Of a stretch of DNA of 64,000 bases, positions 10,983 to 64,000 are shown piece after piece (positions within the stretch are counted from its first letter, which is position 1; the number at the start of each line of letters is the position of its first letter). The stretch is from Octopus sinensis (taxonomy: Eukaryota): assembly GCF_006345805.1 (NCBI RefSeq), contig NC_043000.1, positions 138,198,001 to 138,262,000 of the forward strand. Reading direction: 5' to 3'. Position numbers and translations under genes: made by a program. Below the pieces are notes generated by a model. It did not search any database, was not told the DNA's origin, and saw only the letters and a program-made list of their open reading frames with translations.

Positions 10983-11042
10983 CATGATATCGCGATCATC
11001 ATTTTTGTCATTGTTGTTGTCGTCATCATCATCACCTTCATT

Positions 11043-11086
<44 letters not shown>

Positions 11087-11216
11087 TATCACTATTATCA
11101 TTGTCATTGTCATTCTCCCCTTCCCATTCCCATCACCACCACCACCAGTCGTCATCGTCATCGTTGTCGTCATCATCATCACCATCATCATCCTCATCAT
11201 CACCTTCATCATCACC

Positions 11217-11256
<40 letters not shown>

Positions 11257-11551
11257 CTATTATCATTGTCATTGTCATTCTCCCCTTCCCATTCTCATCA
11301 CCACCACCAGTCGTCATCATCATCGTCGTCGTCATCATCATCACCATCATCATCTTCATCATCACCCTTATCATTATCGTCATTGTCATCAACGTAATCA
11401 TCATTGTTATCATCATCATCATAATCATCACTGTTATCATTGTCATTGTCATTCTCCCTTTCCCCTCCCTATCTCCCCCACCACCATCATCATCACCATC
11501 CTCATCATCACCCTCATCATTATCGTCATCATCATCAGCGTAATCATCGTT

Positions 11552-11583
<32 letters not shown>

Positions 11584-14613: not shown

Positions 14614-15030
14614 GAAGTGGCAAGCTGGCAGAAACGTTAGCACACCAGGCCAAATGCTTAGCAGTATTTCGTCTGCCGTTACGTTCTGAGTTCAAATTCC
14701 GCCGAGGTCGACTTTGCATTTCATCCTTTCGGGTTCAATAAATTAAGTATCAATTACACACTGGGCTCGATATAATCGACTTAATCCGTTTGTCTGTCCT
14801 CGTTTGTCTTCTCTGTGTTTAGCCCCTTGTGGATAGTAAAGAAATAGGTATTTAGTCTGCCACTATGTTCTGAGTTCAAATTCCGCCGAGGTCAACTTTG
14901 CTTTCATCCTTTCAGGGTCGATTAAATAAGCACCAGTTACACACTGGGGTTGATATAATCGACTTAATCCCTTTGTCTGTCCTTGTTTGTCCCCTCTGTG
15001 TGTAGCCCCTTGTGGGCAGTAAAGAAATAA
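14614..15030 (+). mobile_element. Two tandem SINE-C copies, second one 5'-truncated
   Basis: Full copy to ~14850, then a restart at TATTT.GTCTGCC. Confidence 0.85.
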
Positions 15031-18404: not shown

Positions 18405-18412
18405 CTCATCAA

Positions 18413-18447
<35 letters not shown>

Positions 18448-18789
18448 CCATCATCACCATCATCACCATCACCACCATCATCACCATCATCATCACCATC
18501 ATCATCATTATCATCGTCATCGTCGTCGTCATCATCATCAGCATCATCATCATCATCATCATCACCACCACCACCACCACCATCAGCAGCAGCAGCAATG
18601 CCGTCGTCATCATCATCATCGTTGTCGTCGTCGTAATCATTGTTGCCGTCATCATTGTCGTCATCATCACGACAACTACCAACTCCATCGACATCATTGC
18701 CATTGTCATTTTTATCATCATCATCATCCGCATCATTCATCATTCATCATCAATATCATTATTGTTGCATTCATATATTCGCATATTTA
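18405..18789. repeat. Compound (ATC/GTC/ACC/AGC)n array
   Basis: Visible trinucleotide array. Confidence 0.9.
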
Positions 18790-21179: not shown

Positions 21180-21432
21180 ACATCATCATCATCATTTAGC
21201 GTCCGCTTTCCATGCTAGCATGGGTTGGACGGTTCAACTGGGGTCTGTGAAGCCAGAAGGCTGCATCAGGCGCAGTCTGATATGGCAGTGTTTCTATGGC
21301 TGGATGCCCATCCTAACGCCAACCACTCCGTGAATGTATGGGTGCTTTTTACGTGCCACCCGCACAGGTGCCAGACGGAGCTGGCAAACGGCCACAGACG
21401 GATGGTGCTTTTTACGTGCCACCAGAAAAATC
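21180..21432 (-). mobile_element. RTE 3'-end fragment, same terminus as the 51412-57583 LINE
   Basis: (CAT)n-TTAGCGTCCGCTTTCCATGCTAGCATGGGTTGGACG...GGATGCCCATCCTAACGCCAACCACTCC. Confidence 0.85.
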
Positions 21433-26402: not shown

Positions 26403-26639
26403 CTTATGAAATGTATATACAAATATGTATATATGAATATATGTATGTCAAATATTTACTAGATGTGTGTTTGAGTCTATATATTTATGTGTTTATGAAG
26501 AGGTTGTAAGAACTTAGCAACTATAAGCTTTGATTGTGAGGGTGTGGGAGCACACAGATATCCTCTAGTCTGCACCCTTGCATACACAGCAATATATGTA
26601 TGTGTGTTCATATATTTATATTCATGAATATGTATTTTG

Positions 26640-26962
26640 GCTCATGTGCCAGTGGCATGTAAAAGCACCATCCGAACGTGGTCGATGCCAGACCCCTCTG
26701 GCCTCTGTGCTGGTGGCATGTAAAAGCACCATCCAAATGTGGTCGATGCCAGATCCCTCTGGTCTCTGTGCTGGTGGTATGTAAAAAGCACCCACTACAC
26801 TCTCAGAGTAGCAGGTGTTAGGAAGGGCATCCAGCTGTAGAAATGCTGCCAGATCAGATTGGAGCCTGGTGCAGTCTCCTGACTTCCCGGACCCCAGTCG
26901 AACTGTCCAACCCATGCCAGCATGGAAAACAAACGTTAAACAATGATGATGATGATGATGAT
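26640..26962 (+). mobile_element. RTE 3'-end fragment with 3 hairpin modules
   Basis: GTGCCAGTGGCATGTAAAAGCACCATCC repeats, terminal domain and (ATG)n. Confidence 0.85.
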
Positions 26963-29042: not shown

Positions 29043-29083
<41 letters not shown>

Positions 29084-29535
29084 GTTTAATGTCCGTTTTC
29101 CATGCTAGCATGGGTTGGACTGTTTGACCAGGGTCTGGGAAGCCAGGAGGTTGCACCAGGCTCCAGTCTGATCTGGCAGTGTTTCTACAGCTGGATGCCC
29201 TTCCCAATGCCAACCACTCCGTGAGTGTAGTGGGTGCTTTTTACATTCCACTGGCACAGAGGCCAGGGGAGGCTGGCAACGGCCATGATCAGTTGGTGCT
29301 TTTTCTGTACCACCAGTACGGAAGCCAGTCAAAGTGGTGCTGGTATCAGCCACAATCAGATGGTGCTTTTTACATGCCACCAGCACGGGTATCACAACTA
29401 CAATTTCCATTTGATTTTTATTTTGATATTGATGTACTTGCCTCAGTAGGTCTCCTAAAGCACAGCAGGTCACCCTATGATCCAAGGTAAGCACAGCAGG
29501 CCATCCTGCGATCCAAAGTACTTTGGATGGGCTAA
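29043..29535 (-). mobile_element. RTE 3'-end fragment including a homologue of the UTR-start module
   Basis: Minus strand GAGACCTACTGAGGCAAGTACATCAATATCAAAAT...TGGAAATTGTA resembles GAAGACCTGTTGAGGCAAGTGAAAATCAAAAT...TGGAATTTGTA. Confidence 0.85.
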
Positions 29536-32337: not shown

Positions 32338-33105
32338 TAGCGGTTCTAAACCTTTTTGATCTCATTGCACACTAAAAAGCAAATTAGAAATTATGGTGCA
32401 CTTTGTATTACTTTTAACGTTTTTTAACTTGCTGTGTCTTGAGGAAGAGGATTTTTCCATTGCCTTTTCAGACCTGCTGGGACTGGTAACATCCTTTACC
32501 ACTGAAATGGTTTAACTTATAAAAAGCACCCACTACACTCACGGAGTGGTTGGCGTTAGGAAGGGCATCCAGCCGTAGAAACACTGCCAGATCAGACTGG
32601 GCCTGATGCAGCCTTCTGGCCTCACAGACCCCAGTTGAACTGTCCAACCCATGCTAGCATGGAAAGCGGACGCTAAATGATGATGATGATGATGATGATG
32701 AAGGCAGCGCCTGTTGGTAACACATGGACAAAGAGGAAAGTCTAGAAAGATATTCTGGGGAGCATAAATTGGGTTTAGTAGTATGTGCATGCCTTAGAAG
32801 TTGGGCTCAATATGTGTGAGGAAGAGAGACAAGTGAGTAAGGATACCTGAATGAAGATGTGATGATACCCAATAGTTGTTAGGAACTGTTATAGTAGCAA
32901 TAGAAAAAGCTGTTTTAAAACTAAAGAATGTTGAAAAATATAGAAAACTACCACTTATATTGTTTTGTTAATCCCACTTAAGAATAACAAAATTGTTGAT
33001 AACATTTTTCAAAACACTTAAGTATTGAAATTGAGTTTTTATGGTGCACTTAAGTAGCTTGTATAATGCACCAATGTTACACAGTACACATTTCAGGAAC
33101 CACTG
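32338..33105. mobile_element. Old hAT-like non-autonomous element containing a nested RTE 3' fragment
   Basis: Ends TAGCGGTTCTAAAC ... CAGGAACCACTG resemble the CAGTGGTT TIR type. Flanking 8-mers ATTTAGAT and GTTTAGAG match at 6/8. Confidence 0.5.
32520..32700 (+). mobile_element. RTE 3'-end fragment
   Basis: Terminal domain plus (ATG)n. Confidence 0.9.
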
Positions 33106-34865: not shown

Positions 34866-35064
34866 CTAGGTGGCACGTAAAAAGCACCCACTACACTCGC
34901 AGAGTGGTTGGCATTAGGAAGGGCATCCAGCCGTAGAAACTCTGCCAGATCAGACTGGAGCATGGAGCAGCCCCTGGCTTCCCAGACCCCAGTCGAACCA
35001 TCCAACCTGTGCTAGCGCAGAAAACGGACGTTAAACAATGATGATGATGATGATGATGATGATG
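34866..35064 (+). mobile_element. RTE 3'-end fragment
   Basis: Terminal domain plus (ATG)n. Confidence 0.9.
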
Positions 35065-36809: not shown

Positions 36810-37215
36810 ATCAAATTTGATGACTGGCATCTGTGCTTGTGGAACGCTAAGAGTACCAAATGAGTCAGATCATTACCAGAGCAACAAGCTGGCCTCTGTG
36901 CCAATGGCACGTAAAAAACACCATTTGAGTGTGATCATTACCGGTGTCACCTTACTGGCACTTGTGATGGTGGCACATGAGAAAACATTCGAGCAAGGTC
37001 ATTGCCAGTACTGCTTGACTGGCCCTCGTGCCGGTGGCATGTAAATGCACCCACTACACTCTTGGAGTGGTTAACGTTAGGATGGGCATCCAGCTGTAGA
37101 AACTCTGCCAGATCAAATTGGAGTCTGGTGCAGCCATCTGCTTCGCCAGACCTCAGTCAAATTGTCCAACCCATGCTAGCATGGAAAGTGGAAGTTAAAC
37201 GATGATGCTGATGAT
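36810..37215 (+). mobile_element. RTE 3'-end fragment, second subfamily
   Basis: Inter-hairpin segments shared with 43335-43737. Confidence 0.85.
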
Positions 37216-38272
37216 ATGAATTATCCATGCATTCCCCAAAACTCATTTTCTTTACACTCATTTCCCCATCACTCTTAACTACAGCTCTGTGTATTCAGAT
37301 GCTACATGGACACTGAAAAGCAATGTTGCTTTTCATGTAATGGGTTCAAATCAGCATAAAACATATCATAAATATATTTATTCATAGCAATAACATTTTG
37401 CCCCCCTCAGAACCAGTTTTCTGGTTCCTCAGGCAAAAAAACAAAAAAAACGAAACAAAACAAAAGAAGAAAAATCAGTTTCTTTACAAGGGAAAATGGT
37501 TGGAGGTGCCATTTCAACACCTTTCTGCTGTTGAATGTTTTTGCATTGAAAAACTGTTCAAGTGACCTGAATAACAGAATGGTTTGATGGCGCTAGGTCT
37601 GGTGAATGGTGAAGGTGAGGAAGAATCTCTTAGCCTGTCGCCAACATACTGTTCAGTCTCCCTTTTTGTCCTCACCATCTTTTAGGCACCCTCTTGTCTT
37701 CATATCACCCACTCTTTCTCCTATTCACCTACCATATTGCTCATGTCAAGTGGGGAGGCATTGGATCAATCCATATCCAATCACCATCCCCCTCTATCCT
37801 TACCACCATCTCTAACCAGAAAAACCTGTGGCTGTCTTTCTCCCATTATTCCCAAACTTTTACTGTCTCACTGTATTCCCTGTTATTCCCATTCGTTACT
37901 GTTTCTCTATTTCTCCTTTCAGCTCTGTTTCTTCCATTACTCCCTCCTCAGCAACCTTATTATCTAAATGTCCTCCTCCTCCTCCTGAGAGAACAGAAGT
38001 TTGTGAGGACAATTTTGTTTTGCATGACAACTTCTGTGGTGGTGTTGTCATGATAGAATACACCCAAAACACCCCAATGGGATTGGTGTTAAGAATGGCT
38101 CCCTTCCACAGAAAGCAAGCCAGATTGTATGTGTGAGCTAGATGGGATCCTCTGACAAGTCTAGGAGAACAATAAATCTAAATAGGAAATAGCTAACTCA
38201 TCCCATAAAATCTCAGACATAAAATAATGATGGTTATAATAACTATGAGATAAGTATGTGTGTGTGAGTGTG

Positions 38273-39193: not shown

Positions 39194-39281
39194 TCATCAT
39201 CATCATCATCATCATCGTCGTCGTCGTCGTCGTCGTCATCATCCTCATCATCATCGTCGTCGTCGTCGTCGTCGTCGTCAG

Positions 39282-39322
<41 letters not shown>

Positions 39323-39397
39323 GCGTCATCGTCGTCGTCATCAGCATCATCATCATCATCATCATCATCATCATTATCAGCGTCGTCGTTGTCGTCG

Positions 39398-39439
<42 letters not shown>

Positions 39440-39850
39440 ACATCATCATCATCATCACATCATCATCATCATCATCATGTAACGTCCATTGTTCATGCTG
39501 GTATGGATTGAATGGTGTGATCAGAGCTGACAAACTGGTGGGGAGGTGATGCGCCAGACTCTAGTCTGATTTGGCATGGCTTCTATGACTGGATGCTCTT
39601 CCTAATGCCAACCACTTTACAGAGTTTGCTGGATGGTGTGATCAGAGCTGACAAGCTTGGGGTGAGGATGCACCAGACTCCAGTTTGATTTGATATGGCT
39701 TCTATGACTGGATGCCCTTCCTAATGCCAACCACTTTACTTTACAGAGTGTGCTGGGTGCTTTTACATAGCACCACACAGGCGTTTTTACATGGCACCAC
39801 ATAGGTACTTTTATATCTCACCACATGAACACATTTACATGGTGCGCTTT
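39194..39850 (-). mobile_element. Older RTE 3'-end fragment with duplicated terminal ~120 bp and a ~285-bp expanded tail
   Basis: TGGTGTGATCAGAGCTGACAA...CCAACCACTTTAC occurs twice (~39513-39625 and ~39634-39750). The (ATC/GTC)n run at 39194-39478 abuts its 3' end. Confidence 0.75.
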
Positions 39851-43334: not shown

Positions 43335-43737
43335 GTTGGCAGGCATCCGTGCTAGTGAGGTGCAAAGAGCACCATACGAGTGTGATCGTTGACAGAGTGG
43401 CTAACCGGCTTCCATGCCAGTGGCACATAAAAGGCACCATTCGAGTGTGATTGTTACCAGCGTTGCCTTACTGGCACCTGTGCCGGTGGCATGTGTAAAA
43501 AGATTTGAGCAAGGTTGTTGCCAGTACTGCCTGACTGGCCCTCGTGCTGGTGGCACGTAAAAAGCACCCACTACACTCTCGGAGTGGTTGGTGTTAGGAA
43601 GGGCATCAAGCTGTAGAAACTCTGCCAGATCAAGATTGGAGCCTGGTGCAGTCATCTGGTTCACCAGCCTTCAGTCAAAATCGTCCAACCCATGCTAGCA
43701 TGGAAAGCAGACGTTAAACGATGATGATGATGATGAA
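43335..43737 (+). mobile_element. RTE 3'-end fragment, second subfamily
   Basis: Hairpin modules, terminal domain and (ATG)n. Confidence 0.85.
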
Positions 43738-45011
43738 GAAATATTTCTTTTCCTTGTGGTCTATGATAATAACAAATAGTGGATTTGGCTTAATCCTCCT
43801 GTCAATATGATTTACTATGTCTTAGAGTATGTTCCCTTTGTTATTATCTAAGACATTGTCTACTGTATCTTTGAACATTTTTTTATCTTTCTGTAGGTAT
43901 TTCATGATGTTGGCATAATTTACTTTTGGTCATGATTAGTCAACTAGAAACTATATGATTGATTGTTTCTTCACAACATTCACACACTTATGTAGTTATG
44001 TAGTTATTTTTTGGATTTTACTTCCTTACATATTTTGGTGGATTCTAAGTGAGAAAATCCTGGATTTTTTGGTCTGCAGTAAAAACATCCTTTTGTTGCT
44101 TCTCAGTGTGTGTTAAGTTTTTGTCTTCATTTACTTCATCTTTATGTATTGTCCATGTAAGAGCTTTTCTTGCCAACATCTTAGTATTCTGAAATCTCAG
44201 TTTTAGCTTAGCATTTAGTTATTTTAACGGTTTCTGTTGTCTCCACATTCTACTCATTACTGTCTGTTACTTCAGCATCTTTTTTTAAATATTTATTGGC
44301 TTTCATGAAGAGGGAAAATGGTTTATTTTTCCCATATTTTGAAGCTATTTTCATTAGCATTCTTTTATTCTTTTTCAAGGTATTTTCGAAGTCCTACAGT
44401 GGATATTATATAAGTTTTCCTTTCAAAAGTCTTCTAGTTCCCTGCATTCAGAGAAAATATATTTCTGTGTTACCTTTTGGTAATGTGCTCTAAATGTAGT
44501 CGTATTTCTTTTTTCCTTTTTAATGTTGCTTTATCCAGTACACTTTCAATGGAGAATATCAAAATCACAACAACACATAACTGTATCTATAATATTCCTT
44601 TCTAACTTTTTCTTTTGCGTGTGTGTGTGTGTTATCCTCTATCTATTTCATCATTGTTTTTTAGATATTTGTAAATGTCCTTTTTTTTACTTCTCTTAGC
44701 TGCTTTATTTGACATGCTTTATTTACCTTTCTGTAAAATCTTCTCATATATTATTATAAACTAAATTTCCTATTGTCTTCTCTTCCATTGTATCATTGTA
44801 CTCTATGAAGCTGCATCCTTACTTGCTTGACATTATCATTGTGTTCCCTAATTTATCTGTCATTACATTCTGAGTTCAAAATTTTGTCAAGGTTAACTTT
44901 GCCTTTCATCTGCTGGCCTTGTGCCAAAATGTGGAATCATTATTATGCTCCTTTATATCTCTTCATTTTATTTCTCATAGAGCTATTTTTTTCCTAAAAG
45001 CATTGTTTAAT

Positions 45012-46711: not shown

Positions 46712-46930
46712 CATGCTGGTGCTGCACATAAAGCACTGGTGTTAGTGCCATGTAAAATGAACCCAGTACATTCTGTAAGATGACTGGTATTAGGAAGGGC
46801 ATCAAGCCATTGAACCCATGCCAAAACAGACAACTGAAGCTGAGTGGTGCGCTTCTCATTACCAGTGCCTGTCAAATTGTCAGCCCATGCCAGCATGGAA
46901 AAACGGACGTTAAATGATGATAATGATGAT
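46712..46930 (+). mobile_element. RTE 3'-end fragment, diverged
   Basis: TTAGGAAGGGCATC...CCCATGCCAGCATGGAAAAACGGACGTTAAATGATG. Confidence 0.75.
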
Positions 46931-46981
46931 TATATGATTATAAAAGAAATCATCATCATCATCATCATTATTATTATTAAG

Positions 46982-49379: not shown

Positions 49380-51411
49380 ATCTATAACTACACAGCCACA
49401 GAGGTGATGAAAATAAAGTAAAGAAAAGATTTTTTTTTCTTATCATTTTGACAAAGAACTACATTCTTTTAAGATATTTTTAAAGTGGATCTTGGTGAGG
49501 AACATGAATAGAAACTTTTAAGGCATAGAGAAGGCTTCAATTGTTTTTCTTTAATTATTTTTTCTTTAATTTTTGGCTGATTGCTGGATAGAATGCTTTG
49601 TATGATTTATTCTTTATTTGAGCAGAGTTCAAATCTCACTGGGATCAATTTTGCATTTCATCCGTTTGGGGCAAATGAATAAAGAATCTTACACTTAAAT
49701 TGTTACTTCTTTTTCTATCAATTCTATGGCTACTATAATGATTTTTATTCCATTCAGTTGTGTTTTAATTTGCTATAGATATCAAGGGAATATTTATATC
49801 GCAGAGAGAGATCTGGTGTAGTTCTGCAGGTTATCGGTTGATAGCTAAGCTTCATAACATTAACAGACTGAGTAAAATGGTTTAGGGAAACAGCAGAGTA
49901 AAATAAACATTGACTGATTTTTACATTAAGAGCATTACTCATTAAGTGAGAATTAATCTTAAATGTTGCTGCAAGCTAGTTGTATTTAATAAAAGGAGAG
50001 AACAGTAAAGAAATATTCAGTGATGATCAGTATAAATTAGGCTCTGCAGATGGTAAGATAACATACAGAGGCATCCAGTGAGAAGATAATCTATAAAAAT
50101 GCTCAGCTGACTGTTAACAGCATGAATGATGCATGGCTGAATGGACTTTTGCCTGGTATTATAAAGACAATGATTTGGAGATAAGAAATAAAAAGTTATT
50201 AGTAATACTGGGAAAATTCCTTAAGAAGCAAATACTAATTACAACTAAATGAGTATCAATAATTTAAAACTGAAAATTATTAATTTACATCGGAATAAAA
50301 ATAAACAGAAACAAAACCATTGCCTTGGAGCAAACCAAATCAGCATAATTTAGTAATCTAGTGAAGTGTAGGAATACAGTATGTTAAAAAAAAAACAACA
50401 ACAAAAACCAAGCTTATCAAATGGACAGAACAAAAGCGCCAACAATCAACAAGAAGTTAGAGTTGCAATCAGAAACAGTTACTGTAAGAGATTACCTTCA
50501 TATTTTTATATTATGTATTCATATCAGAATTATATACAATGCAAGTGAGTTTTTTTTTTCTTTGTTTGTTTTAGTTTTCAAGAGAAATGTTGTATTGAGA
50601 TAGTGAAACAGAAAGCAAGTTACCATGGGAACTGATATTAATTGCAATGTGCATTTAAATTTTTATTATTCATGTAGTTTTTGTGCTTAGTTATTGTTTT
50701 GTTTTAGGTGAATTTTAAAAATAAATTTATATTTTATAATTTGATTTGCTTTTTGTCTCATTTATGGTTCTGTTAAATTTCCATTTCTATACTCTACATT
50801 TAATACAGTTTCCTCCTTCAACAATAAATTGCCAGAACATGTTTAAAATTGGGCTGAAAAATCAATAAGTCCCTCTTATATTTTCTTTATACTTATTTCT
50901 GTGTTTTCTTATTTATGGTGATATTCTACATAATTATATAACTATGTAATTTGGAGATCAGCACGCTACTTGTAGTTTTCTCAGCTTGCAGTTTAGCTAA
51001 TGAGTACAGCCTGTTAGATAATTTCATCTACTAACCTTCCAAAGCCACTTAATTGCACAGTTTGTAGAAAATGATTATATGTTCTGGCAATCAATGGCTA
51101 AAATTCATATTTGTCATATGTCCTTCAACAGAATTTAATAATGCAGGATAGCTGAAGGAGCTTTTGTCATACAGTATATTTTAGATGAACAATTATATAT
51201 ATTCTAGTGGCTCAGTATCATATTTTTATATTAAAATCAGAAATATACCTAAGAAATGTGGACAAAACATTAGGTTTCTAATCAATGGGATTTTGAACAA
51301 GAAAACTGAGCTAAGGGAAATAACTAAAATATGCCGATGGCATGGTTTGAAATAAACTAAATATAGATGGATGTACTGAATGACATATGCAAAAATATTC
51401 TTAATGAATTG

Positions 51412-54285
51412 TACAAGATTTTCTGGGCAGGGAACACTGATGGGGTTGGTGGCGTGGGTATACTTATCGCTGAGAAATGGATAGATAGAGTAATTGAGGT
51501 AATCAGAGTAAGTGACAGAATACTTAAGATTAGAATAGTGCTTCATAATAGATTAGCAACCATTATATCGGCCTATGCCCCTCAGCCAGGGCTACCCGAT
51601 GGACAGAAAGACAGTTTCTATGACACCCTACTGCAGACCACCTCATTGACGAACGACAGGGACCTTCTCTTTGTGGCTGGTGATTTCAATGGGCATGTTG
51701 GACGACATGCTGGGGGCTTCCATGGCGTGCATGGAGGCTACGTTTATGGTTCCCGCAACGAGGAGGGAACCAGGCTGCTGGAGTTCTGCGATGCGAATAG
51801 TCTTATGATCTGCAACACTAACTTCAGGAAACCAACAAGCCACCTGGTCACCTACCGATCGGGCCGGCATACTAGCCAAATCGACTACATCCTCGCCAGA
51901 AAAAGGGAAAGATGGCTGCTTATAAATGCCAAAACCTTCCCAGGCGAAGAATGCACCCCACAACATAGACTGGTAGTTAGTGACTTTAGGATCAGGACTA
52001 AGAGGGCGACTAGAAGACGACCAACATGGAGAAGAAGGGTCTGGAAGCTTAAAGACCCTGCGAATGGACAGAGATTTAGAGATATGTTACTTGAAGCCTT
52101 TGACGAAGTGGAAGTGGGTATAGCTACACATGGGGTAGAAGACAACTGGACGTTTCTGAGGGACAACCTGCTGAAAGCCGCTGACCAGATCTGTGGCTGG
52201 TGCAAAGTCCCCTTAAGACCCAAAATTACATGGTGGTGGAACAATATTGTTGATAGGGCTATTAGACAAAAGAAACAGGCTTGGAAGGCCTGGAAGAACG
52301 GTGGTAGCAGGGAAGGTATCAGACTGCCAGAAGGGAAGCCAGGAGACAGGTCTATCTAGCCAGAGGGGAAGCAGATAAAAGAAAATTTGCCAATGTCCTG
52401 CGCCGTGAGGATGAAAGACTTGAGGTATTTCGTGTTGCAAGACAGTGTGTGAGAGAGAATCGAGATGTGGTAGGAGAGAAATGTGTTTGCATGGAGGATG
52501 GTTCACTTGCGCTAAATGAGGATGCAAAGAGAGAAGCTTGGAGACGCCACTATGAAAGGTTGCTGAATGAGGAAAATGAATGGGATAAAGAGAGTCTGCC
52601 GAATGTTGACCCAACAGAGGGACCAGCTATCCGAGTTGATAGTTCCGTGGTAGCTAAGGCAATTAGAAGCATGAAGACAGGGAAAGCCCCAGGCCTATCA
52701 GGAATTACTGCAGAGATGCTCAAAATATCTGGTAGTGTCAGCTATAGCATAGTCACCCGTATAGTTAACCAGGTGATACACGATGGAGTCATACCCAATG
52801 ACTGGTGTAGCAGCATAATAGTCAACTGCTACAAAGGTAAAGGCGATGCCCTAGATACAAATAACTACAGGGGCATCAAGCTGTTGGATCAGGTAATGAA
52901 GGTTACGGAGAGGGTTATAGCCCAGTTAATTAGAGAGAGAGTTAGCTTAGATGATATGCAGTTTGGGTTCATGCCAGGGAAAAGTACTACTGATGCTATA
53001 TTCTGGTAAGACAGCTGCAGGAGAAATACCTAGCCAAAGGTAAGCCCTTGTACCTGGCTTTTGTTGACTTAGAGAAAGCCTTTGACAGGGTCCCCCGATC
53101 CCTTATCTGGTGGTCAATGAGGAAACTAGGGATAGATGAATGGTTAGTGAGAGCTGTGCGAGCCATGTACAGAGACGCAGCTACTAAGGTGAGGGTTGGC
53201 AACGAGTACAGTGAAGAATTCCGGGTAGAGGTTGGGGTCCACCAAGGTTCAGTCCTCAACCCCCTCCTATTTATCATAGTCCTCCAGGCAATAACGGAAG
53301 AATTTAAGACAGGATGCCCCTGGGAGCTCCTATATGCTGATGACCTTGCTCTAATTGCTGAGTCACTATCAGAACTGGAGGAGAGGTTTCAGGTGTGGAA
53401 ACAAGGATTAGAATCGAAGGGCCTTAGAATCAACCTAGCCAAAACCAAAGTCCTAATAAGTAGGAAGGTGGACCAACCACAAACGACTTCAGGTAGATGG
53501 CCCTGCTCGATCTGTAAAAAAGGTGTAGGTAGAAACTCTATAAGATGCACCAAGTGTAAGCTATGGACACATAAGAGGTGCAGCAATGTCAAAGGAAGGC
53601 TAACTAAGAAAATAGTTTTTGTCTGTGGCAGATGCTCAAGAGAAATAAACACTGGAAATGTGCAGAGACCAACTTCTACCACGTTCCAGGGAGACAAACT
53701 AGAAGTAGTTGATAGCTTCCGCTACCTAGGAGACCAAGTCAGTAGCGGGGGGGGTGTGCTGAAAGTGTAACTGCTAGAGTAAGAATAGCCTGGGCAAAGT
53801 TTAGAGAGCTCTTACCCCTGCTGGTGACAAAAGGCCTCTCGCTAAGAGTAAAAGGCAGACTATATGATGCGTGTGTACGTACAGCCATGCTACATGGTAG
53901 TGAAACATGGGCCGTGACAGCTGAGGATATGCGTAAGCTTGCAAGAAATGAAGCCAGTATGCTCCGATGGATGTGTAATGTCAGTGTTCATAATCGTCAG
54001 AGTGTAAGTACTTTGAGAGAAAAGTTGAACCTAAGAAGTGTCAGTTGTGGTGTGCAAGAGAGACGGCTGCGCTGGTATGGTCATGTGACAAGAATGGCTG
54101 AAGATAGTTGTGTGCAAAAGTGCTACACCCTAGCAGTTGAGGGAACCTGTGGAAGAGGTAGACCCAGGAAAACCTGGGACGAGGTGGTGAAGCACGGCCT
54201 TCGAACTTTAGGTCTCACCAAGGAAATGACTGAAGACCGAGTCCTATGGAAGTGTGCTGTGCATGAGAGGACCCGGCAGGACTAG
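51412..54285 (+). pseudogene. RTE APE-RT ORF lacking its N-terminus, broken by 3 frameshifts (~52315, ~53005, ~53750)
   Basis: ORF-track pieces 51367-52359, 52449-53009, 53048-53770 and 53824-54285 join into one RTE-like protein with small indels. The bridging frames are open (YQTARREARRQVYLARGE, FLVRQLQEKYLAK, GCAESVTARVRIAW). I saw no in-frame stops in the joined frame. The third shift lies in a G8 run. Confidence 0.9.
53504..53635 (+). other. C4HC3 PHD-type zinc finger encoded inside the RT, between ...RINLAKTKVL and ...VDSFRYLG
   Basis: CSIC-x10-CTKC-KLWT-H-KR-C-x14-CGRC matches the PHD spacing C-x2-C...C-x2-C-x4-H-x2-C...C-x2-C, including the Trp before the His. Confidence 0.8.
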
Positions 54286-57200
54286 TCAGGCCATATCCCG
54301 TGGCCCCTACCTGGGACGTAGTCGATCCACCTGTGCATACCTTCCTTCTTGTGACACTTGTGAAGACCTGCTGAGGCAAGTGAAAATCAATCAAAATAGA
54401 TGAACATCAATGGAATTTGTATCTTTGTGGTACCAGTGCCTGTGGCACACAAGAAAACCATCCGAACGTGGCCGTAGCCAGTACCGCATCGACTCGCCTC
54501 CGTGTTGTGGGAACATGGTGGCACATAAAAACACCATCCGAAGACCCGGCAAGACTAGTCAGGTCATAACCCGTGGGCCCTACCTGGGACGTAGTCAGTC
54601 CACCTGTACATACCTTCCTTCTTGTGACACTTGTGAAGACCTGTTGAGGCAAGTGAAAATCAAAATCAAAACAAATCAAAATAGATGAACATCAATGGAA
54701 TTTGTATCTTTGTGGTACCAGTGCCGGTGGCACACAAGAATCCATCCGAACGTGGCCGTAGTCAGTACCGCTTGTGGTACCAGTGCCGGTGGCACACAAG
54801 AGTCCATCCGAACGTGGCCGTAGTCAGTACCGCATCACTGGCCATCGTGCTGTGGGCACATAACAAACACCATCCGGTCGTGGCCGTTCGCCAGCCTCAT
54901 CTAGCACCTGTGTCGGTGGCACATAAAAAGTAGTCAGTACCGCTTGTGGTACCAGTGCCGGTGGCACACAAGAATCCATCCGAACATGGCCGTAGTCAGC
55001 ACCGCATCACTGGCCATCGTGCTGTGGGCACATAACAAACACCATCCGGTCGTGGCCGTTCGCCAGCCTCATCTAGCACCTGTGTCGGTGGCACATAAAA
55101 ACACCATCCGAAGACCCGGCAAGACTAGTCAGGCCATAAACCATGGCCCCTACCTGGGACGTAGTCAGTCCACCTGTGCATACCTTCCTCCTTGTGATAC
55201 TTGTGAAGGCCTGTTGAGGCAAGTGAAAATCAAAATCAAAATCAAAATCAAAACAAATCAAAATAGATGAACATCAATGGAATTTGTATCTTGTGGTACC
55301 AGTGCCTGTGGCACACAAGAAAACCATCCGAACGTGGCCGTAGCCAGTACCGCATCGACTCGCCTCCGTGCTGTGGGAACATGGTGGCACATAAAAACAC
55401 CATCCGAAGACCCGGCAAGACTAGTCAGGTCATAACCCGTGGGCCCTACCTGGGACGTAGTCAGTCCACCTGTACATACCTTCCTTCTTGCGACACTTGT
55501 GAAGACCTGTTGAGGCAAGTGAAAATCAAAATCAAAACAAATCAGAATAGATGAACATCAATGGAATTTGTATCTTTGTGGTACCAGTGCCGGTGGCACA
55601 CAAGAATCCATCCGAACGTGGCCGTAGTCAGTACCGCTTGTGGTACCAGTGCCGGTGGCACACAAGAATCCATCCGAACGTGGCCGTAGTCAGTACCGCA
55701 TCACTGGCCATCGTGCTGTGGGCACATAACAAACACCATCCGGTCGTGGCCGTTCGCCAGCCTCATCTAGCACCTGTGTCGGTGGCACATAAAAAGTAGT
55801 CAGTACGCTTGTGGTACCAGTGCCGGTGGCACACAAGAATCCATCCGAACATGGCCGTAGTCAGCACCGCATCACTGGCCATCGTGCTGTGGGCACATAA
55901 CAAACACCATCCGGTCGTGGCCGTTCGCCAGCCTCATCTAGCACCTGTGTCGGTGGCACATAAAAACACCATCCGAAGACCCGGCAAGACTAGTCAGGCC
56001 ATAAACCATGGCCCCTACCTGGGACGTAGTCAGTCCACCTGTGCATACCTTCCTCCTTGTGATACTTGTGAAGGCCTGTTGAGGCAAGTGAAAATCAAAA
56101 TCAAAATCAAATCAAAACAAATCAAAATAGATGAACATCAATGGAATTTGTATCTTGTGGTACCAGTGCCGGTGGCACACAAGAGAAAACCATCCGAAAG
56201 TGGCCGTAGCCAGTACCGCATCGACTGGCCTCCATGCTGTGGGCACATGACAAACACCATCCGATCGTGGCCGTTCGCCAGCCTCATCTAGCACCTGTGT
56301 CGGTGGCACAAAAACACCATCCGAAGACCCGGCAAGACTAGTCAGGCCATAACCCATGGCCCCTACCTGGGACGTAGTCAGTCCACCTGTGCATTCCTTC
56401 CTTCTTGTGACACTTGTGAAGACCTGTTGAGGCAAGTGAAAATCAAAATCAAAATCAAAACAAATCAAAATAGATGAACATCAATGGAATCTGTATCTTT
56501 GTGGTACCAGTGCCGGTGGCACACACTTTGTGGTACCAGTGCCGGTGGCACACAAGAGAACCATCCGAACGTGGCCGTAGCCAGTTCCGCATCGACCGGC
56601 CTCTGTGCTGTGGGCACGTAACAAACACCATCCGATCATGGCCGTTCGCCAGCCTCATCTGGCACCTGTGTCGGTGGCACATAAAAACACCTTCCGAAGA
56701 CCCGGCAAGACTAGTCAGTCCACCTGTGCATACCTTCCTTCTTGTGACACTTGTGAAGACCGGTTGAGGCAAGTGAAAATCAAAATCAAATCAAATCAAA
56801 ATAGACAAAATAGATGAACATCAATGGAATTTGTATCTTGTGGTACCAGTGCCTGTGGCACACAAGAAATCCATCAGTGCTGTAGTCAGTGCGGTGGGCA
56901 CATGACAAACACCATCCGATCATGGCCGTTCGCCAGCCTCATCTAGCACCTGTGTCGGTGGCACATAAAAACACCATCCGAAGACCCGGCAAGACTAGTC
57001 AGGCCATAACCCATGGCCCCTACCTGGGACGTAGTCAGTCCACCTGTGCATACCTTCCTTCTTGTGACACTTGTGAAGACCTGTTGAGGCAAGTGAAAAT
57101 CAAAACAAATCAAAATAGATGAACATCAATGGAATTGTATCTTTGTGGTAACACAAGAAAACCATCCGAACGTGGCCGTAGCCAGTACCGCATCGACTGG

Positions 57201-57415
57201 CCTCCGTGCTGTGGGCACGTAACAAGCACCATCCGATCGTGGCCCTTTGCCAGCCTCATCTGGCACCTGTGTCGGTGGCACATAAAAACACCATCCGAGC
57301 GTGGCCGTCTGCCAGCCTCGTCTGGCACCTGTGTCGGTGGCACATAAAAAACACCATCCGAGCGTGGCCATTTGCCAGCCTCGTCTGGCACCTGTGTCGG
57401 TGGCACATAAAATCA
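54270..57415 (+). repeat. Higher-order tandem array forming the LINE 3' UTR
   Basis: 8 copies of a module starting GACCCGGCA(A/G)GACTAG at about 54270, 54543, 55112, 55409, 55978, 56325, 56699 and 56983. About 30 GTGCC-N3-GGCAC-type hairpins by hand count. An ~866-bp near-identical tandem block spans ~54405-55270 and ~55270-56135. Confidence 0.95.
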
Positions 57416-59937
57416 CCCACTACACTCTCGGAGTGGTTGGCGTTAGGAAGGGCATCCAGCTGTAGAAACACTGCCAGATCTGACTGGACTGGTGCAGCTT
57501 TCGGGCTCCCCAGACCCCAGTTGAACCGTCCAACCCATGCTAGCATGGAAAGCGGACGTTAAATGATGATGATGATGATGATGATGAATTGAAATATTCT
57601 CCTTGGTTGGAGAAGGCTCACGAAATTCTAGCAGTGTTCATTAGTGACACAAAAGAAAGGGGGAGATAATTTCAATAGGGCTGCAGTATTAACATCCAAC
57701 AGGCATTTTTGAACAATGGATGTAACTATATTTAAGTAATGTAACCGCGATGATATTGAAAGAATTACTTTTGATGTTTGGATTATTTGATAAATAAGAA
57801 TGTTTAAGACATGGGAATAAACCAGAATTTTTATAGCAATTTACATGGACTTTATCAGCTTCATGTATTCCAGGTCCAAGAAGAATTAAAGTTTTGGTGA
57901 AAGGATTTTCTCTAGGAGTATGATCCCTACTGGAATATTATATATATATATATATAGCAATCCAATATCTTAGATATAAAGACGTTATTGCTTGCTTCCT
58001 ATTTTCCATCTGCTATAGATTCTGACTACCAGAGAAGTGCAATAAATAAGGATCCGGAATCAATCACTTTCAAATAAAATATGTTTGATTTGATCTGTTT
58101 GTAACAATTGAAATTATTTATGGAAAGATGTACTACCAAAACTGTCAATAAAACAAAATGCATGACAAATATTTGTTTGGTGAGCACAGTCACGCACACA
58201 GGCACACACACACACACACACGCACACACACACACTCACACACACTCACACACATGCACACATGCGATGGCAGCAACTCAGTATCAAGCAATGCCATCTC
58301 TTAGATTTAATTGTTCTCTTAAAGTAGCATGGATGTGGCTTTTCAGTTTTCCAATACTGCTATAGGCCTGCACACTTTTGCACAGATGTGGAAACGATGG
58401 ACACCTCTGGAAGCAAGTGTTCATAGATATTCCACCTATGTTGACACATTCCTTAATTTCATCATGAAATTTTCCATTTAGTGTTTTGCCTTTTTTAGTT
58501 ACTGTCAGTCATATTATACAACACATAATAGAAATGTTAAGAAAATTAATCCTATGCCAGAGGTTTCTGCTTAAGTGATGGAAGACCTTGTAGTGAGCCA
58601 ACCCCACATCTAAACAACGTATTCATTTTCTGAAAAGAGCAAGATTGTGTCACAGAAAGCTAACAAAGCCTCTGGTCTTATTTCAGAGTTTTCATCGTCC
58701 TATAGAGATATCCAAAGAAAGATTAGGTCATGCCTAGCTATTGGATGGCTGTTGAGCCTACTGAGATTTTATTTCTTGTCCTGTAGGGTATACATACAAT
58801 TCAACATGTGCAACTGTTTCTCCAGACACATTGTTTTGTTTCTCTCCTCATCTGTTTCCTCTTCTCATTGCTTTCTGCAGAAGAGTGTAGACTCGAAATG
58901 TTAAAGAATTCTCCTATTTCTCCTGAATGTCAAACTAATACACCCTCTTCCTTGTTCCTTCACTTGTCTCTGACTTTTGGTTTTTTTGTCTCTGACTTTT
59001 TGTACCATTTTGAACCATATATATGTCTGTGTATGATGATGATGATGACAATGATGACTTTCCCCTCATGACCAAGGAAGACCATCACTGGTCATTGCCT
59101 ATGCAAAATGCCAGCAATGCTCATCCAAGGGGTTCACATTTACAGCTTCCATGCTCAACATGGCACCCTCCTGCTCCACAAGGAATCTAATAGTCACCTC
59201 ACTGACAATTGCACAACCTAAACTTTTGGGTGTAATAAGGCTTTCACAGAAGCTCTCAAACCTTCTCCACCCCTACTGACATGACCAAGAGACAGGCCAG
59301 GGCAAGATATCCAGTTTCAAAATGGATCACAGGATCAGGTGTGTGGGAGTGCCATAACATCAAGCCCAAGTAAAACATCTTCAAAATGTTCAATAACATT
59401 CCCTACATATCTCATTTTATATAACAGAGTGATTATATCCTAGAGACATGCTTTAGCAAAAGTTAAGGGGTACTTCACTCCAGCATGCTGGACACCAGCT
59501 CAAAATTTCTGAGGACTTGTGCTATTGACAGATAGTTCTTGAACCAACACGAGGTTCAGCTGCCCTTTTGACAGATTTTGTTTTTAGTCCTGCTGGGTTT
59601 CTAGTAACCACTCCCTCATCATGATGACCTAATCAGGCAACAGGTTGTACTGGATTTCACGTTACCAGTAGCTCTCATGAGAGGCCTCACAATTGACAAC
59701 ACATATGCACACACACACACACACAGATACAGGTGGCCTAGGGGTTTGGATGTCATACTCACTATTATTAGATTATGGGTTTGATTCTCAGACTGAGCAG
59801 TGCATTGTGATCTTGAGCAAAACACTTCATTTCATGTTACTTTGCATTCATTTTGACATCTGATATGTGGCACACTTGTGCACATGTATATATCGATGTG
59901 ATGTGGGGGGAGTGAACTAATTTACAACACATACATT

Positions 59938-63799: not shown

Positions 63800-64000
63800 A
63801 TCACATCCGAACGTGGCTGTAGCCAGCGCCGCGCGACTGGCATCCGTGCCGGTGGCACGTAAAAAGCACCATCCGACCGTGGCCATTGCCAGCTTCGTCT
63901 GGTCCCCGTTCCGGTGGCACGTAAAAAACACCATCCGATCATTGGCCATTTGCCAACCTCGTCAGGCACGTAAAAAGCACCCACTACACTCACGGAGTGG
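63800..64000 (+). mobile_element. RTE 3'-end fragment cut by the window end
   Basis: Hairpin modules, then GCACCCACTACACTCACGGAGTGG. Confidence 0.85.

What the first reader, a model, noticed from the sequence alone, without database searches (positions are those of the whole stretch)
54270..57583. RTE LINE whose 3' UTR has grown to ~3.3 kb by repeatedly re-copying the ORF end plus stem-loop modules
Seen: the UTR is longer than the retained ORF (~2.9 kb). It holds 8 copies of a module that starts with the last codons of the ORF (GACCCGGCA(A/G)GACTAG, TRQD*). Copies 2-8 share essentially one junction, CC(A/T)TCCGAA|GACCCGGC, which differs from the ORF context (GAGAG|GACCC). Copy 7 has a deletion between two TAGTCAG direct repeats. 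About 30 hairpins are interleaved. One 8-bp TSD (ATGAATTG) brackets the whole 6.17 kb. Established: RTE 3' UTRs are usually short and their 3' structure is recognised by the RT. Inference: one template jump created the junction, which then amplified by slippage or unequal exchange. The array could act as a multivalent RT-binding or RNA-stability scaffold, or be the start of a LINE-derived satellite.
Basis: partly seen in the sequence, partly recalled or inferred. Interest (0 to 1): 0.8.

Follow-up and report, generated by a model that had tools for sequence, protein, structure and literature searches.

The report
Octopus RTE LINE with tandemly expanded 3' UTR
A dead, 5'-truncated RTE retrotransposon copy in an octopus-type genome has a tail region about five times its usual ~600 bp, because a ~350-bp piece was duplicated head-to-tail seven extra times; this is a clean but ordinary case of a tandem repeat growing inside a transposon.

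Summary
One element (51412-57583) sits between 8-bp direct repeats. It has a 5'-truncated endonuclease/reverse-transcriptase ORF and a 3298-bp 3' UTR. The UTR holds 8 copies of GACCCGGCRRGACTAG (0.01 expected), and modules 2-8 are joined by one identical junction.

Six related copies keep both the ORF end and the tail: one on an ENA contig and five at two Octopus vulgaris loci. All six carry a single module, with a UTR of about 400-620 bp. So the expansion is not the ancestral design. No copy of the same subfamily could be found.

The junction lies in 2-3 nt of microhomology (GA/GAA) between the ancestral ORF end (GAGAAGACCC) and a native ~62-bp UTR subunit (CCATCCGA). Growth was stepwise: the older modules differ by 1-4% each. 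The last step was an 866-bp, two-module duplication that is 99.5% identical, with breakpoints in homologous module sequence. That pattern fits unequal exchange or slippage.

The amplified unit lacks the conserved terminal ~170 nt shared by all short mobilised copies. It also folds no better than shuffled sequence. The "multivalent RT-binding scaffold" idea is therefore unsupported.

Whether the array began before or after insertion is unresolved. This is a new member of a known kind (tandem repeats arising in a LINE 3' UTR), of low to moderate interest.

The parts
51404..51411 (+). Left target-site duplication ATGAATTG
   Evidence: Exact 8-mer; only 3 occurrences in the window on both strands. 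Homology to RTE proteins starts at the very next codon.
51412..54285 (+). 5'-truncated RTE ORF: endonuclease 51559-51906, RT about 52845-53473, PHD-like finger 53504-53635, C-terminal region ending TRQD*
   Evidence: Pfam Exo_endo_phos_2, RVT_1 and PHD. Residue 1 aligns to residues 77-117 of ~1000-aa relatives. There are 0 nonsense codons in 955 codons and three 1-nt deletions at about 52315, 53001 and 53752. dN/dS is 0.21 against the O. vulgaris copy.
54270..54542 (+). Module 1: last 16 nt of the ORF plus UTR start; its 3' part carries an internal deletion
   Evidence: It is the most diverged module, with 11 of 257 private substitutions.
54543..55112 (+). Module 2, with internal 62-bp and 172-bp duplications
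55113..55408 (+). Module 3: its 5' part has its own variants; its 3' part is a copy of the 3' part of module 1
55409..55977 (+). Module 4, a near-identical copy of module 2
   Evidence: 1 of 119 and 1 of 95 differences from module 2
55978..56325 (+). Module 5: its 5' part is identical to that of module 3; its 3' part is full length
   Evidence: 0 of 119 differences from module 3 in the 5' part
56326..56698 (+). Module 6, with a 29-bp internal duplication at 56497-56554
56699..56982 (+). Module 7, with a 36-nt deletion between TAGTCAG repeats and a second deletion
56983..57392 (+). Module 8, the canonical UTR body. It is collinear with the single-module UTRs of relatives and ends in 3.2 copies of the 63-bp subunit (57214-57412). 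It has a 14-nt deletion in its first subunit.
   Evidence: 88.5% collinear with L002:771-1402 and 79% with L029:11246-11826; TRF
57393..57562 (+). Conserved 3'-terminal region with the CCATGCTAGCATGG hairpin. It is not part of the amplified module.
   Evidence: Shared at 77-98% identity with 15 other copies in the window and in the loci. The shortest copies hold only this region.
57563..57583 (+). (ATG)n tail
   Evidence: TRF finds 8.3 copies over 57563-57587, 100% matches
57584..57591 (+). Right target-site duplication ATGAATTG
54390..56120 (+). Most recent step: an 866-bp two-module unit (54390-55255) duplicated in tandem (55256-56120)
   Evidence: 4 substitutions and 3 single-base indels between the two copies. 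Identity drops to about 90% to the left of 54372.

Best explanation
This is one 5'-truncated, non-autonomous copy of an octopod RTE-type LINE. Its canonical ~600-bp 3' UTR has gained seven extra head-to-tail copies of a ~350-bp segment. That segment runs from the last 16-18 nt of the ORF to 23 nt into the second 62-bp UTR subunit.

Shown:
- All seven junctions are the same, so the junction arose once.
- The junction sits in 2-3 nt of microhomology (GA or GAA) between the ancestral ORF end ...GAGAAGACCC and the subunit core ...CCATCCGA(A/G)CG.
- The array then grew in several steps. The older modules carry private substitutions and indels.
- The last step duplicated two modules together (866 bp, 99.5% identical). 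Its breakpoints lie in sequence that is homologous between modules.

Inferred:
- The growth was DNA-level unequal exchange or replication slippage. The UTR is natively repetitive (a 62-bp minisatellite and an (AAATC)n microsatellite) and therefore prone to it.
- The array has no function. It is a neutral by-product.
- At least the last step happened at this locus. Whether the first steps preceded the insertion is open.
For: - Eight module starts and one junction.
- Single-module UTRs in six related copies that keep both ORF end and tail:
  - L002, ENA contig, 86-88% identity, UTR about 610 bp.
  - L029:9012-11826, O. vulgaris, 85-89% identity, UTR about 560 bp.
  - L029:1530-3280 and L029:15897-14764.
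  - L001:10016 onward and L001:5725-6306.
- The published octopus RTE-2_OV has UTRs of about 600 nt (PMC9115989).
- The ancestral ORF end reads GAGAAGACCC in three relatives.
- The two-module repeat has 4 substitutions and 3 one-base indels in 866 bp. Its edges lie in the conserved 5' part of the module.
- Private divergence per older module is 1.0-4.3%. Eight columns show variants shared by subsets of modules, which indicates stepwise history.
- Other, smaller duplications with different boundaries lie inside the array: 29, 62 and 172 bp.
- Other tail copies in the window show the same tendency:
  - the 62-bp subunit in 2.4 copies at 26645-26792 and 1.9 copies at 63844-63963;
  - a 119-bp duplication at 39512-39739.
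- There is no tail or terminal region at any internal junction.
- The element lacks about 80-115 N-terminal codons and the 5' UTR. It cannot profit from its own UTR.
Against: - No copy of the same subfamily (over 95% identity) could be examined. A long-UTR subfamily is therefore not excluded.
- The ORF has no nonsense codon in 955 codons. At the modules' mean private divergence of 2.3%, about 3 would be expected (P about 0.04, rising to about 0.08 after dropping doubtful alignment columns). This hints that the first duplications pre-date the insertion.
- An RNA-level template switch by the RT would leave the same junction as a DNA-level duplication.
- No reads were available to confirm the copy number.
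Confidence: 0.62

Rival explanations
1. The array is a trait of a subfamily, made at the RNA level. The reverse transcriptase of an active master element switched template from the ORF end back to the downstream subunit. The multi-module UTR was then inherited and enlarged over rounds of retrotransposition, and this copy received most of its modules at insertion.
For: - There are no nonsense codons in 955 codons, while modules differ by 1-4% each.
- dN/dS is 0.21-0.45 against relatives, so the copy left an active lineage recently.
- The three frameshifts are 1-nt deletions, mostly in short homopolymers. They may be consensus errors.
- The 2-3 nt microhomology fits RT template switching as well as DNA repair.
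Against: - No second locus with the junction was found in the window or in about 40 kb of O. vulgaris sequence.
- All six related copies have one module.
- The timing statistic is weak (P 0.04-0.08).
- The last step has breakpoints in homologous module sequence and not at the junction. That fits recombination better than RT jumping.
Confidence: 0.25
2. Assembly over-expansion: some modules, above all the 866-bp near-identical repeat, are artefacts of assembling a repetitive region.
For: - The two 866-bp copies differ by only 4 substitutions.
- Their 3 indels are single-base length changes in short runs. The 3 ORF frameshifts are of the same kind. This suggests a long-read consensus with residual errors.
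Against: - Modules 1, 2, 3, 6, 7 and 8 each carry private substitutions and distinctive indels, so at least six modules are distinct sequences.
- There are no N gaps anywhere in the window.
- At 3.3 kb the array is short enough for ordinary long reads to span.
Confidence: 0.07
3. Functional scaffold: the repeated modules act as multiple binding sites for the element's RT, or they stabilise the RNA.
For: Each ~62-bp subunit keeps a short inverted repeat, GCCAG(6-11 nt)CTGGC. It is intact in 19 of 25 independent subunits although the loops vary.
Against: - The amplified unit excludes the terminal ~170 nt. That is the only part kept by the shortest mobilised copies and the best-conserved part across families.
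- Folding energy is no better than shuffles, z = -0.07 and +0.18.
- The consensus fold of the subunit is -1.1 kcal/mol with almost no covariation.
- There was no Rfam match.
- This copy is 5'-truncated.
- Relatives manage with one module.
Confidence: 0.04
4. Nested or tandem insertions: repeated insertion of 5'-truncated copies of the same RTE into one another's UTR or tail.
For: RTE-type elements with microsatellite tails often land in existing tails. Long (ATG)n arrays are common in this window.
Against: - No internal junction carries the terminal region, an (ATG)n tail or a target-site duplication.
- All seven junctions are identical to the base.
- There is only one tail and one pair of flanking repeats.
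Confidence: 0.02

Closest known systems
Octopus RTE LINEs (e.g. RTE-2_OV of Octopus vulgaris, Petrosino et al. 2022, PMC9115989) and their related short tail copies
   Same: - A single ORF with endonuclease and RT.
- A 3' UTR of about 600 nt that begins with a microsatellite.
- A simple-repeat tail.
- The nearest DNA relatives are O. vulgaris copies at 85-89% identity.
   Different: - This copy has seven extra UTR modules, giving a 3.3-kb UTR.
- It is 5'-truncated.
- Identity with RTE-2_OV itself was not tested, because no sequence was available.
Satellites derived from LINE 3' ends: chicken HinfI/SCR1 from the CR1 3' UTR plus the end of ORF2, the common cetacean satellite from the L1 3' end, and the HeT-A-derived 18HT satellite of Drosophila (review PMC9659126)
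   Same: The repeat unit is built from the end of the LINE ORF plus 3' UTR sequence, arranged head to tail.
   Different: - Those are long arrays detached from any intact element.
- Here there are only 8 units. They are still inside one element, bounded by its target-site duplication and ending in the normal tail.
- It is at most an early stage.
Hypervariable 3' UTR tandem repeats of Ogre LTR retrotransposons (Macas et al. 2009, cited in PMC9659126) and the VNTR of SVA elements (own knowledge)
   Same: Tandem repeats inside the non-coding 3' part of a retroelement, varying in copy number between copies.
   Different: - Those arrays are a family-wide feature carried by retrotransposition. That is not shown here.
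- They belong to a different element class.
Tandem TE dimers made by double insertion and then expanded by unequal exchange (McGurk and Barbash 2018; own knowledge)
   Same: Later growth by unequal exchange between misaligned repeats.
   Different: The founding junction here is an internal microhomology join. It has no element terminus, tail or target duplication, so it is not a double insertion.

Membership tests
RTE-clade non-LTR retrotransposon | Single ORF with an N-terminal apurinic-type endonuclease followed by reverse transcriptase | tested here: met
   Exo_endo_phos_2 and RVT_1 in one reading frame once three 1-nt shifts are allowed for. Relatives are single proteins of about 1000 aa.
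RTE-clade non-LTR retrotransposon | No ORF1 | not testable with these tools
   The copy is 5'-truncated, lacking about 80-115 codons and the 5' UTR.
RTE-clade non-LTR retrotransposon | 3' end made of short tandem repeats instead of poly(A), with short target-site duplications | tested here: met
   An (ATG)8 tail and a 5-8 bp duplication. [quoted passage not shown]
RTE-clade non-LTR retrotransposon | RT domain groups with RTE elements in a phylogeny | not tested
   No named RTE reference sequences were on hand and hits carry no clade names. The label rests on architecture, on the tail, and on the literature on octopus RTEs.
Tandem repeat (minisatellite) arising inside a transposon UTR | Three or more head-to-tail copies sharing one junction, inside an element with its own termini | tested here: met
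   8 modules, 7 identical junctions, one tail and one pair of flanking repeats.
Tandem repeat (minisatellite) arising inside a transposon UTR | Related elements without the expansion | tested here: met
   Six related copies have one module.
LINE-derived satellite DNA | Long arrays (tens to thousands of units), present at loci independent of the parent element | tested here: not met
   Only 8 units, all within one element. There is no other junction in the window or in the fetched loci. The source genome could not be searched.
Tandem array by repeated or double insertion | Each unit ends with the element's 3' terminus and tail, with target duplications at the joins | tested here: not met
   Internal junctions read CCATCCGAA|GACCCGG, with no terminal region or (ATG)n.

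The most novel reading that the evidence does not exclude
The multi-module UTR belongs to a young, still mobile RTE subfamily. In that subfamily the UTR grows between rounds of retrotransposition, by RT template switching or by recombination in master copies. Copies of it are dispersed in the genome, so a LINE would be caught spreading the seeds of a future satellite.
Probability: 0.2. Interest if true: 0.45.

Novelty: new member of a known kind. Interest (0 to 1): 0.25.

Why it matters
It is a well-preserved intermediate. The founding junction, the stepwise growth and the latest two-module duplication can all be read off a tandem array that still sits inside its parent LINE, with target-site duplication and tail intact. 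That illustrates how LINE 3' ends can seed minisatellites and perhaps satellites.

It also matters for octopus repeat annotation. Such arrays inflate element length and may be split into many 'SINE-like' hits. It does not point to a new mechanism or function.

Tried and rejected
1. A protein search with a spurious ORF spanning the junction (55809-56288), meant to find other contigs with the junction, gave no hit.
2. The exact junction 22-mer gave 0 hits in JGI metagenome contigs and in GTDB genomes. The 17-mer module start gave 23 loci, and all were chance matches with no homology to the element. These collections hold no octopus RTE, so the absence says nothing.
3. An exact look-up of the window's own C-terminal ORF found nothing on record.
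4. Other ENA contigs (L003-L005) belong to more distant families at about 71-73% identity. Their UTRs are different or cut off, so they were not informative.
5. Rfam (E up to 1) and tRNA scans of the element found nothing. There is no sign of a tRNA-derived or known structured RNA.
6. The attempt to date the array against the ORF (no nonsense codons versus module divergence) gave only P of about 0.04-0.08. CpG transitions do not explain the module divergence, as they account for 5 of 40 substitutions. This is left open.
7. Nested insertion, a functional scaffold and an assembly artefact were considered and ranked low (see the rival explanations).
8. The species of the window was not determined. 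The nearest hits are Octopus vulgaris and O. bimaculoides sequences, none identical.
Full report
WHAT IS THERE

The region is the 3' half of a single non-LTR retrotransposon copy spanning 51412-57583 (6172 bp). It is flanked by ATGAATTG at 51404-51411 and 57584-57591. That 8-mer occurs only three times in the window on both strands. The first three bases, ATG, could belong to the (ATG)n tail, so the true target-site duplication is 5-8 bp.

The left part (51412-54285) encodes an endonuclease (Exo_endo_phos_2), a reverse transcriptase (RVT_1) and a PHD-like finger. Read in the right frames it has no nonsense codon in 955 codons. It has three 1-nt deletions, at about 52315, 53001 and 53752. They are short length changes, two of them within T or G runs, and might be consensus errors.

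A search of 1.8 billion representative proteins shows that residue 1 of this ORF aligns to residues 77-117 of single-ORF relatives about 1000 aa long. The copy is therefore 5'-truncated, and the homology begins exactly after the left repeat.

The nearest named relatives are Octopus vulgaris and O. bimaculoides proteins. The host is an octopod, but the species was not determined.

THE ARRAY

GACCCGGCRRGACTAG occurs eight times, against 0.01 expected. Aligning the modules shows that the 18 nt before each of modules 2-8 are the same: ATAAAAACACC(A/T)TCCGAA. The seven junctions are identical to the base, so they descend from one event.

The modules are 273, 570, 296, 569, 348, 373, 284 and 605 bp long. 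Each module has these parts:
- The last 16 nt of the ORF.
- About 170 bp of unique UTR with an (AAATC)n microsatellite.
- Two or more copies of a ~62-bp subunit with the core CACCATCCGA. The array holds 28 of these cores.

Module 8 continues into the rest of the normal UTR:
- Three 63-bp subunits.
- A conserved ~170-nt terminal region.
- The (ATG)8 tail.

Module 6 has a 29-bp duplication, modules 2 and 4 have 62-bp and 172-bp duplications, and module 8 has a 14-nt deletion.

WHAT THE NORMAL UTR LOOKS LIKE

I could not reach the source genome, but related copies were recovered through protein hits.

An ENA contig (L002, 86-88% identity) carries the ORF end ...GAGAAGACCCGGCAAGACTAG. It is followed by one module and the tail, about 610 bp in all, collinear with window 56980-57573.

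In O. vulgaris, a copy at L029:9012-11826 (85-89% identity over 2.6 kb) has a UTR of about 560 bp. Two further copies in L029 and two in L001 also have 400-600 bp between the stop codon and the tail. One of the L001 copies is interrupted by another element.

The published RTE-2_OV has UTRs of about 600 nt and a microsatellite starting at the ORF end (PMC9115989).

The one-module UTR is therefore the ancestral state, and this copy has seven extra modules.

HOW THE JUNCTION AROSE

Three relatives read GAGAAGACCC at the ORF end. The window's GAGAGGACCC is a later A-to-G change.

The subunit reads ...CACCATCCGA(A/G)CGTGGCC. The junction CCATCCGAA|GACCC therefore lies in 2-3 nt shared by both parents (GA or GAA). 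Such a join can come from replication slippage, from microhomology-mediated repair, or from a template switch by the reverse transcriptase. The sequence alone cannot tell these apart.

HOW THE ARRAY GREW

The segment 54390-55255 is repeated at 55256-56120, with 4 substitutions and 3 single-base indels (99.5% identity). Just to the left of it, identity falls to about 90%. In module terms this is a tandem copy of [3' part of module 1, module 2, 5' part of module 3]. The exchange point lies in the conserved stretch after the microsatellite, which is the expected product of unequal exchange between misaligned modules.

Before that step the array had six modules. They carry 1.0-4.3% private substitutions each, with a mean of 2.3% (40 of 1714). 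There are also eight columns with variants shared by subsets of modules. Growth was therefore stepwise and not a single burst.

The region is intrinsically unstable. The 62-bp subunit is tandemly repeated in unrelated tail copies (26645-26792, 63844-63963, L002). Another tail copy has a 119-bp duplication at 39512-39739.

No internal junction carries a tail, a terminal region or a target duplication. Repeated insertion is therefore excluded.

TIMING

With 135 nonsense-prone sites per unit divergence, a neutral divergence of 2.3% would give about 3 stop codons, and none is seen (P about 0.04). After dropping doubtful alignment columns the figure is about 0.08. CpG decay does not explain the module divergence, since only 5 of 40 substitutions are CpG transitions.

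dN/dS against relatives is 0.21-0.45, so the copy left an active lineage not long ago.

This is a weak hint that the first duplications pre-date the insertion. In that case a long-UTR master would exist. I leave the question open.

STRUCTURE AND FUNCTION

The 'hairpins' are short:
- Perfect stems of 5 bp or more number 28, against 17.5 (maximum 26) in shuffles.
- The minimum free energy of the canonical UTR and of a module equals that of shuffles, with z = -0.07 and +0.18.
- The consensus fold of 25 independent subunits is -1.1 kcal/mol.
- The inverted repeat GCCAG...CTGGC is intact in 19 of 25 subunits, with variable loops.
- Rfam finds nothing.

The part that is conserved across all families is the terminal ~170 nt with the CCATGCTAGCATGG hairpin. 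It is the only part kept by the shortest copies, for example 32522-32702. That part is present once and is not in the amplified unit.

Together with the 5' truncation, this argues against a multivalent RT-binding role.

ARTEFACT CHECK

At least six modules are distinct sequences with their own substitutions and indels. The window has no gaps. Only the 866-bp repeat could in principle be an over-expansion, and reads are needed to settle that.

COMPARISON WITH WHAT IS KNOWN

Tandem repeats built from the end of a LINE ORF plus its 3' UTR are documented:
- the chicken HinfI satellite from CR1;
- the cetacean satellite from L1;
- HeT-A-derived satellites;
- by analogy, the variable 3' UTR repeats of Ogre elements (PMC9659126; PMC12628747).

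This locus is a small, early, element-internal example in an octopod RTE. I file it as a new member of a known kind, with low to moderate interest.

Noticed in passing
window 39194-39781 (minus strand): Another RTE/SINE-type tail copy with a 119-bp tandem duplication of its tail body (39512-39739). Its (ATG/ACG)n tail has expanded to about 285 bp (39194-39478).
   Followed up: partly
window 11023-11583 and 18406-18620: Very long (TCA)n arrays, the reverse complement of (TGA)n: 187 and 71 units. They have the same repeat motif as the RTE/SINE tails. This may be microsatellite growth seeded by element tails.
   Followed up: no
window 21181-21423, 26638-26962, 29061-29453, 32522-32702, 34869-35059, 36889-37219, 43420-43739, 46733-46937, 63804-64000: About ten short copies share the last 180-390 bp of the RTE UTR at 71-92% identity. 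They belong to several families. Whether they are SINEs with their own heads or 5'-truncated LINEs was not resolved.
   Followed up: partly
window 14664-15029: Tandem dimer (183 bp x 2, 87% matches) of a different SINE-like repeat.
   Followed up: no
L001:5690-5760 (Octopus vulgaris OX597824.1): A 5'-truncated RTE copy begins with a partial duplication of the ORF-end/UTR-start segment. Its junction differs from the one in the window, which suggests this boundary is duplicated recurrently.
   Followed up: no
window 52315, 53001, 53752; 54424, 54940, 55244: All three ORF frameshifts, and all three indels between the two 866-bp copies, are single-base length changes, mostly in short homopolymers. 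They could be long-read consensus errors and not real mutations.
   Followed up: partly
window 54286-57583: The UTR array has a CpG observed/expected ratio of 0.69 and 51% GC. The ORF and flanks have 0.39-0.42 and 36-47% GC.
   Followed up: no
proteins P0080, P0110, P0122, P0152: Close relatives of this animal RTE protein are filed in public records under bacterial names: Acinetobacter baumannii, Pseudomonas aeruginosa, and Herbaspirillum and Thiodiazotropha MAGs. They sit on contigs of about 0.6-1.8 kb. This is most likely host or sample contamination.
   Followed up: no
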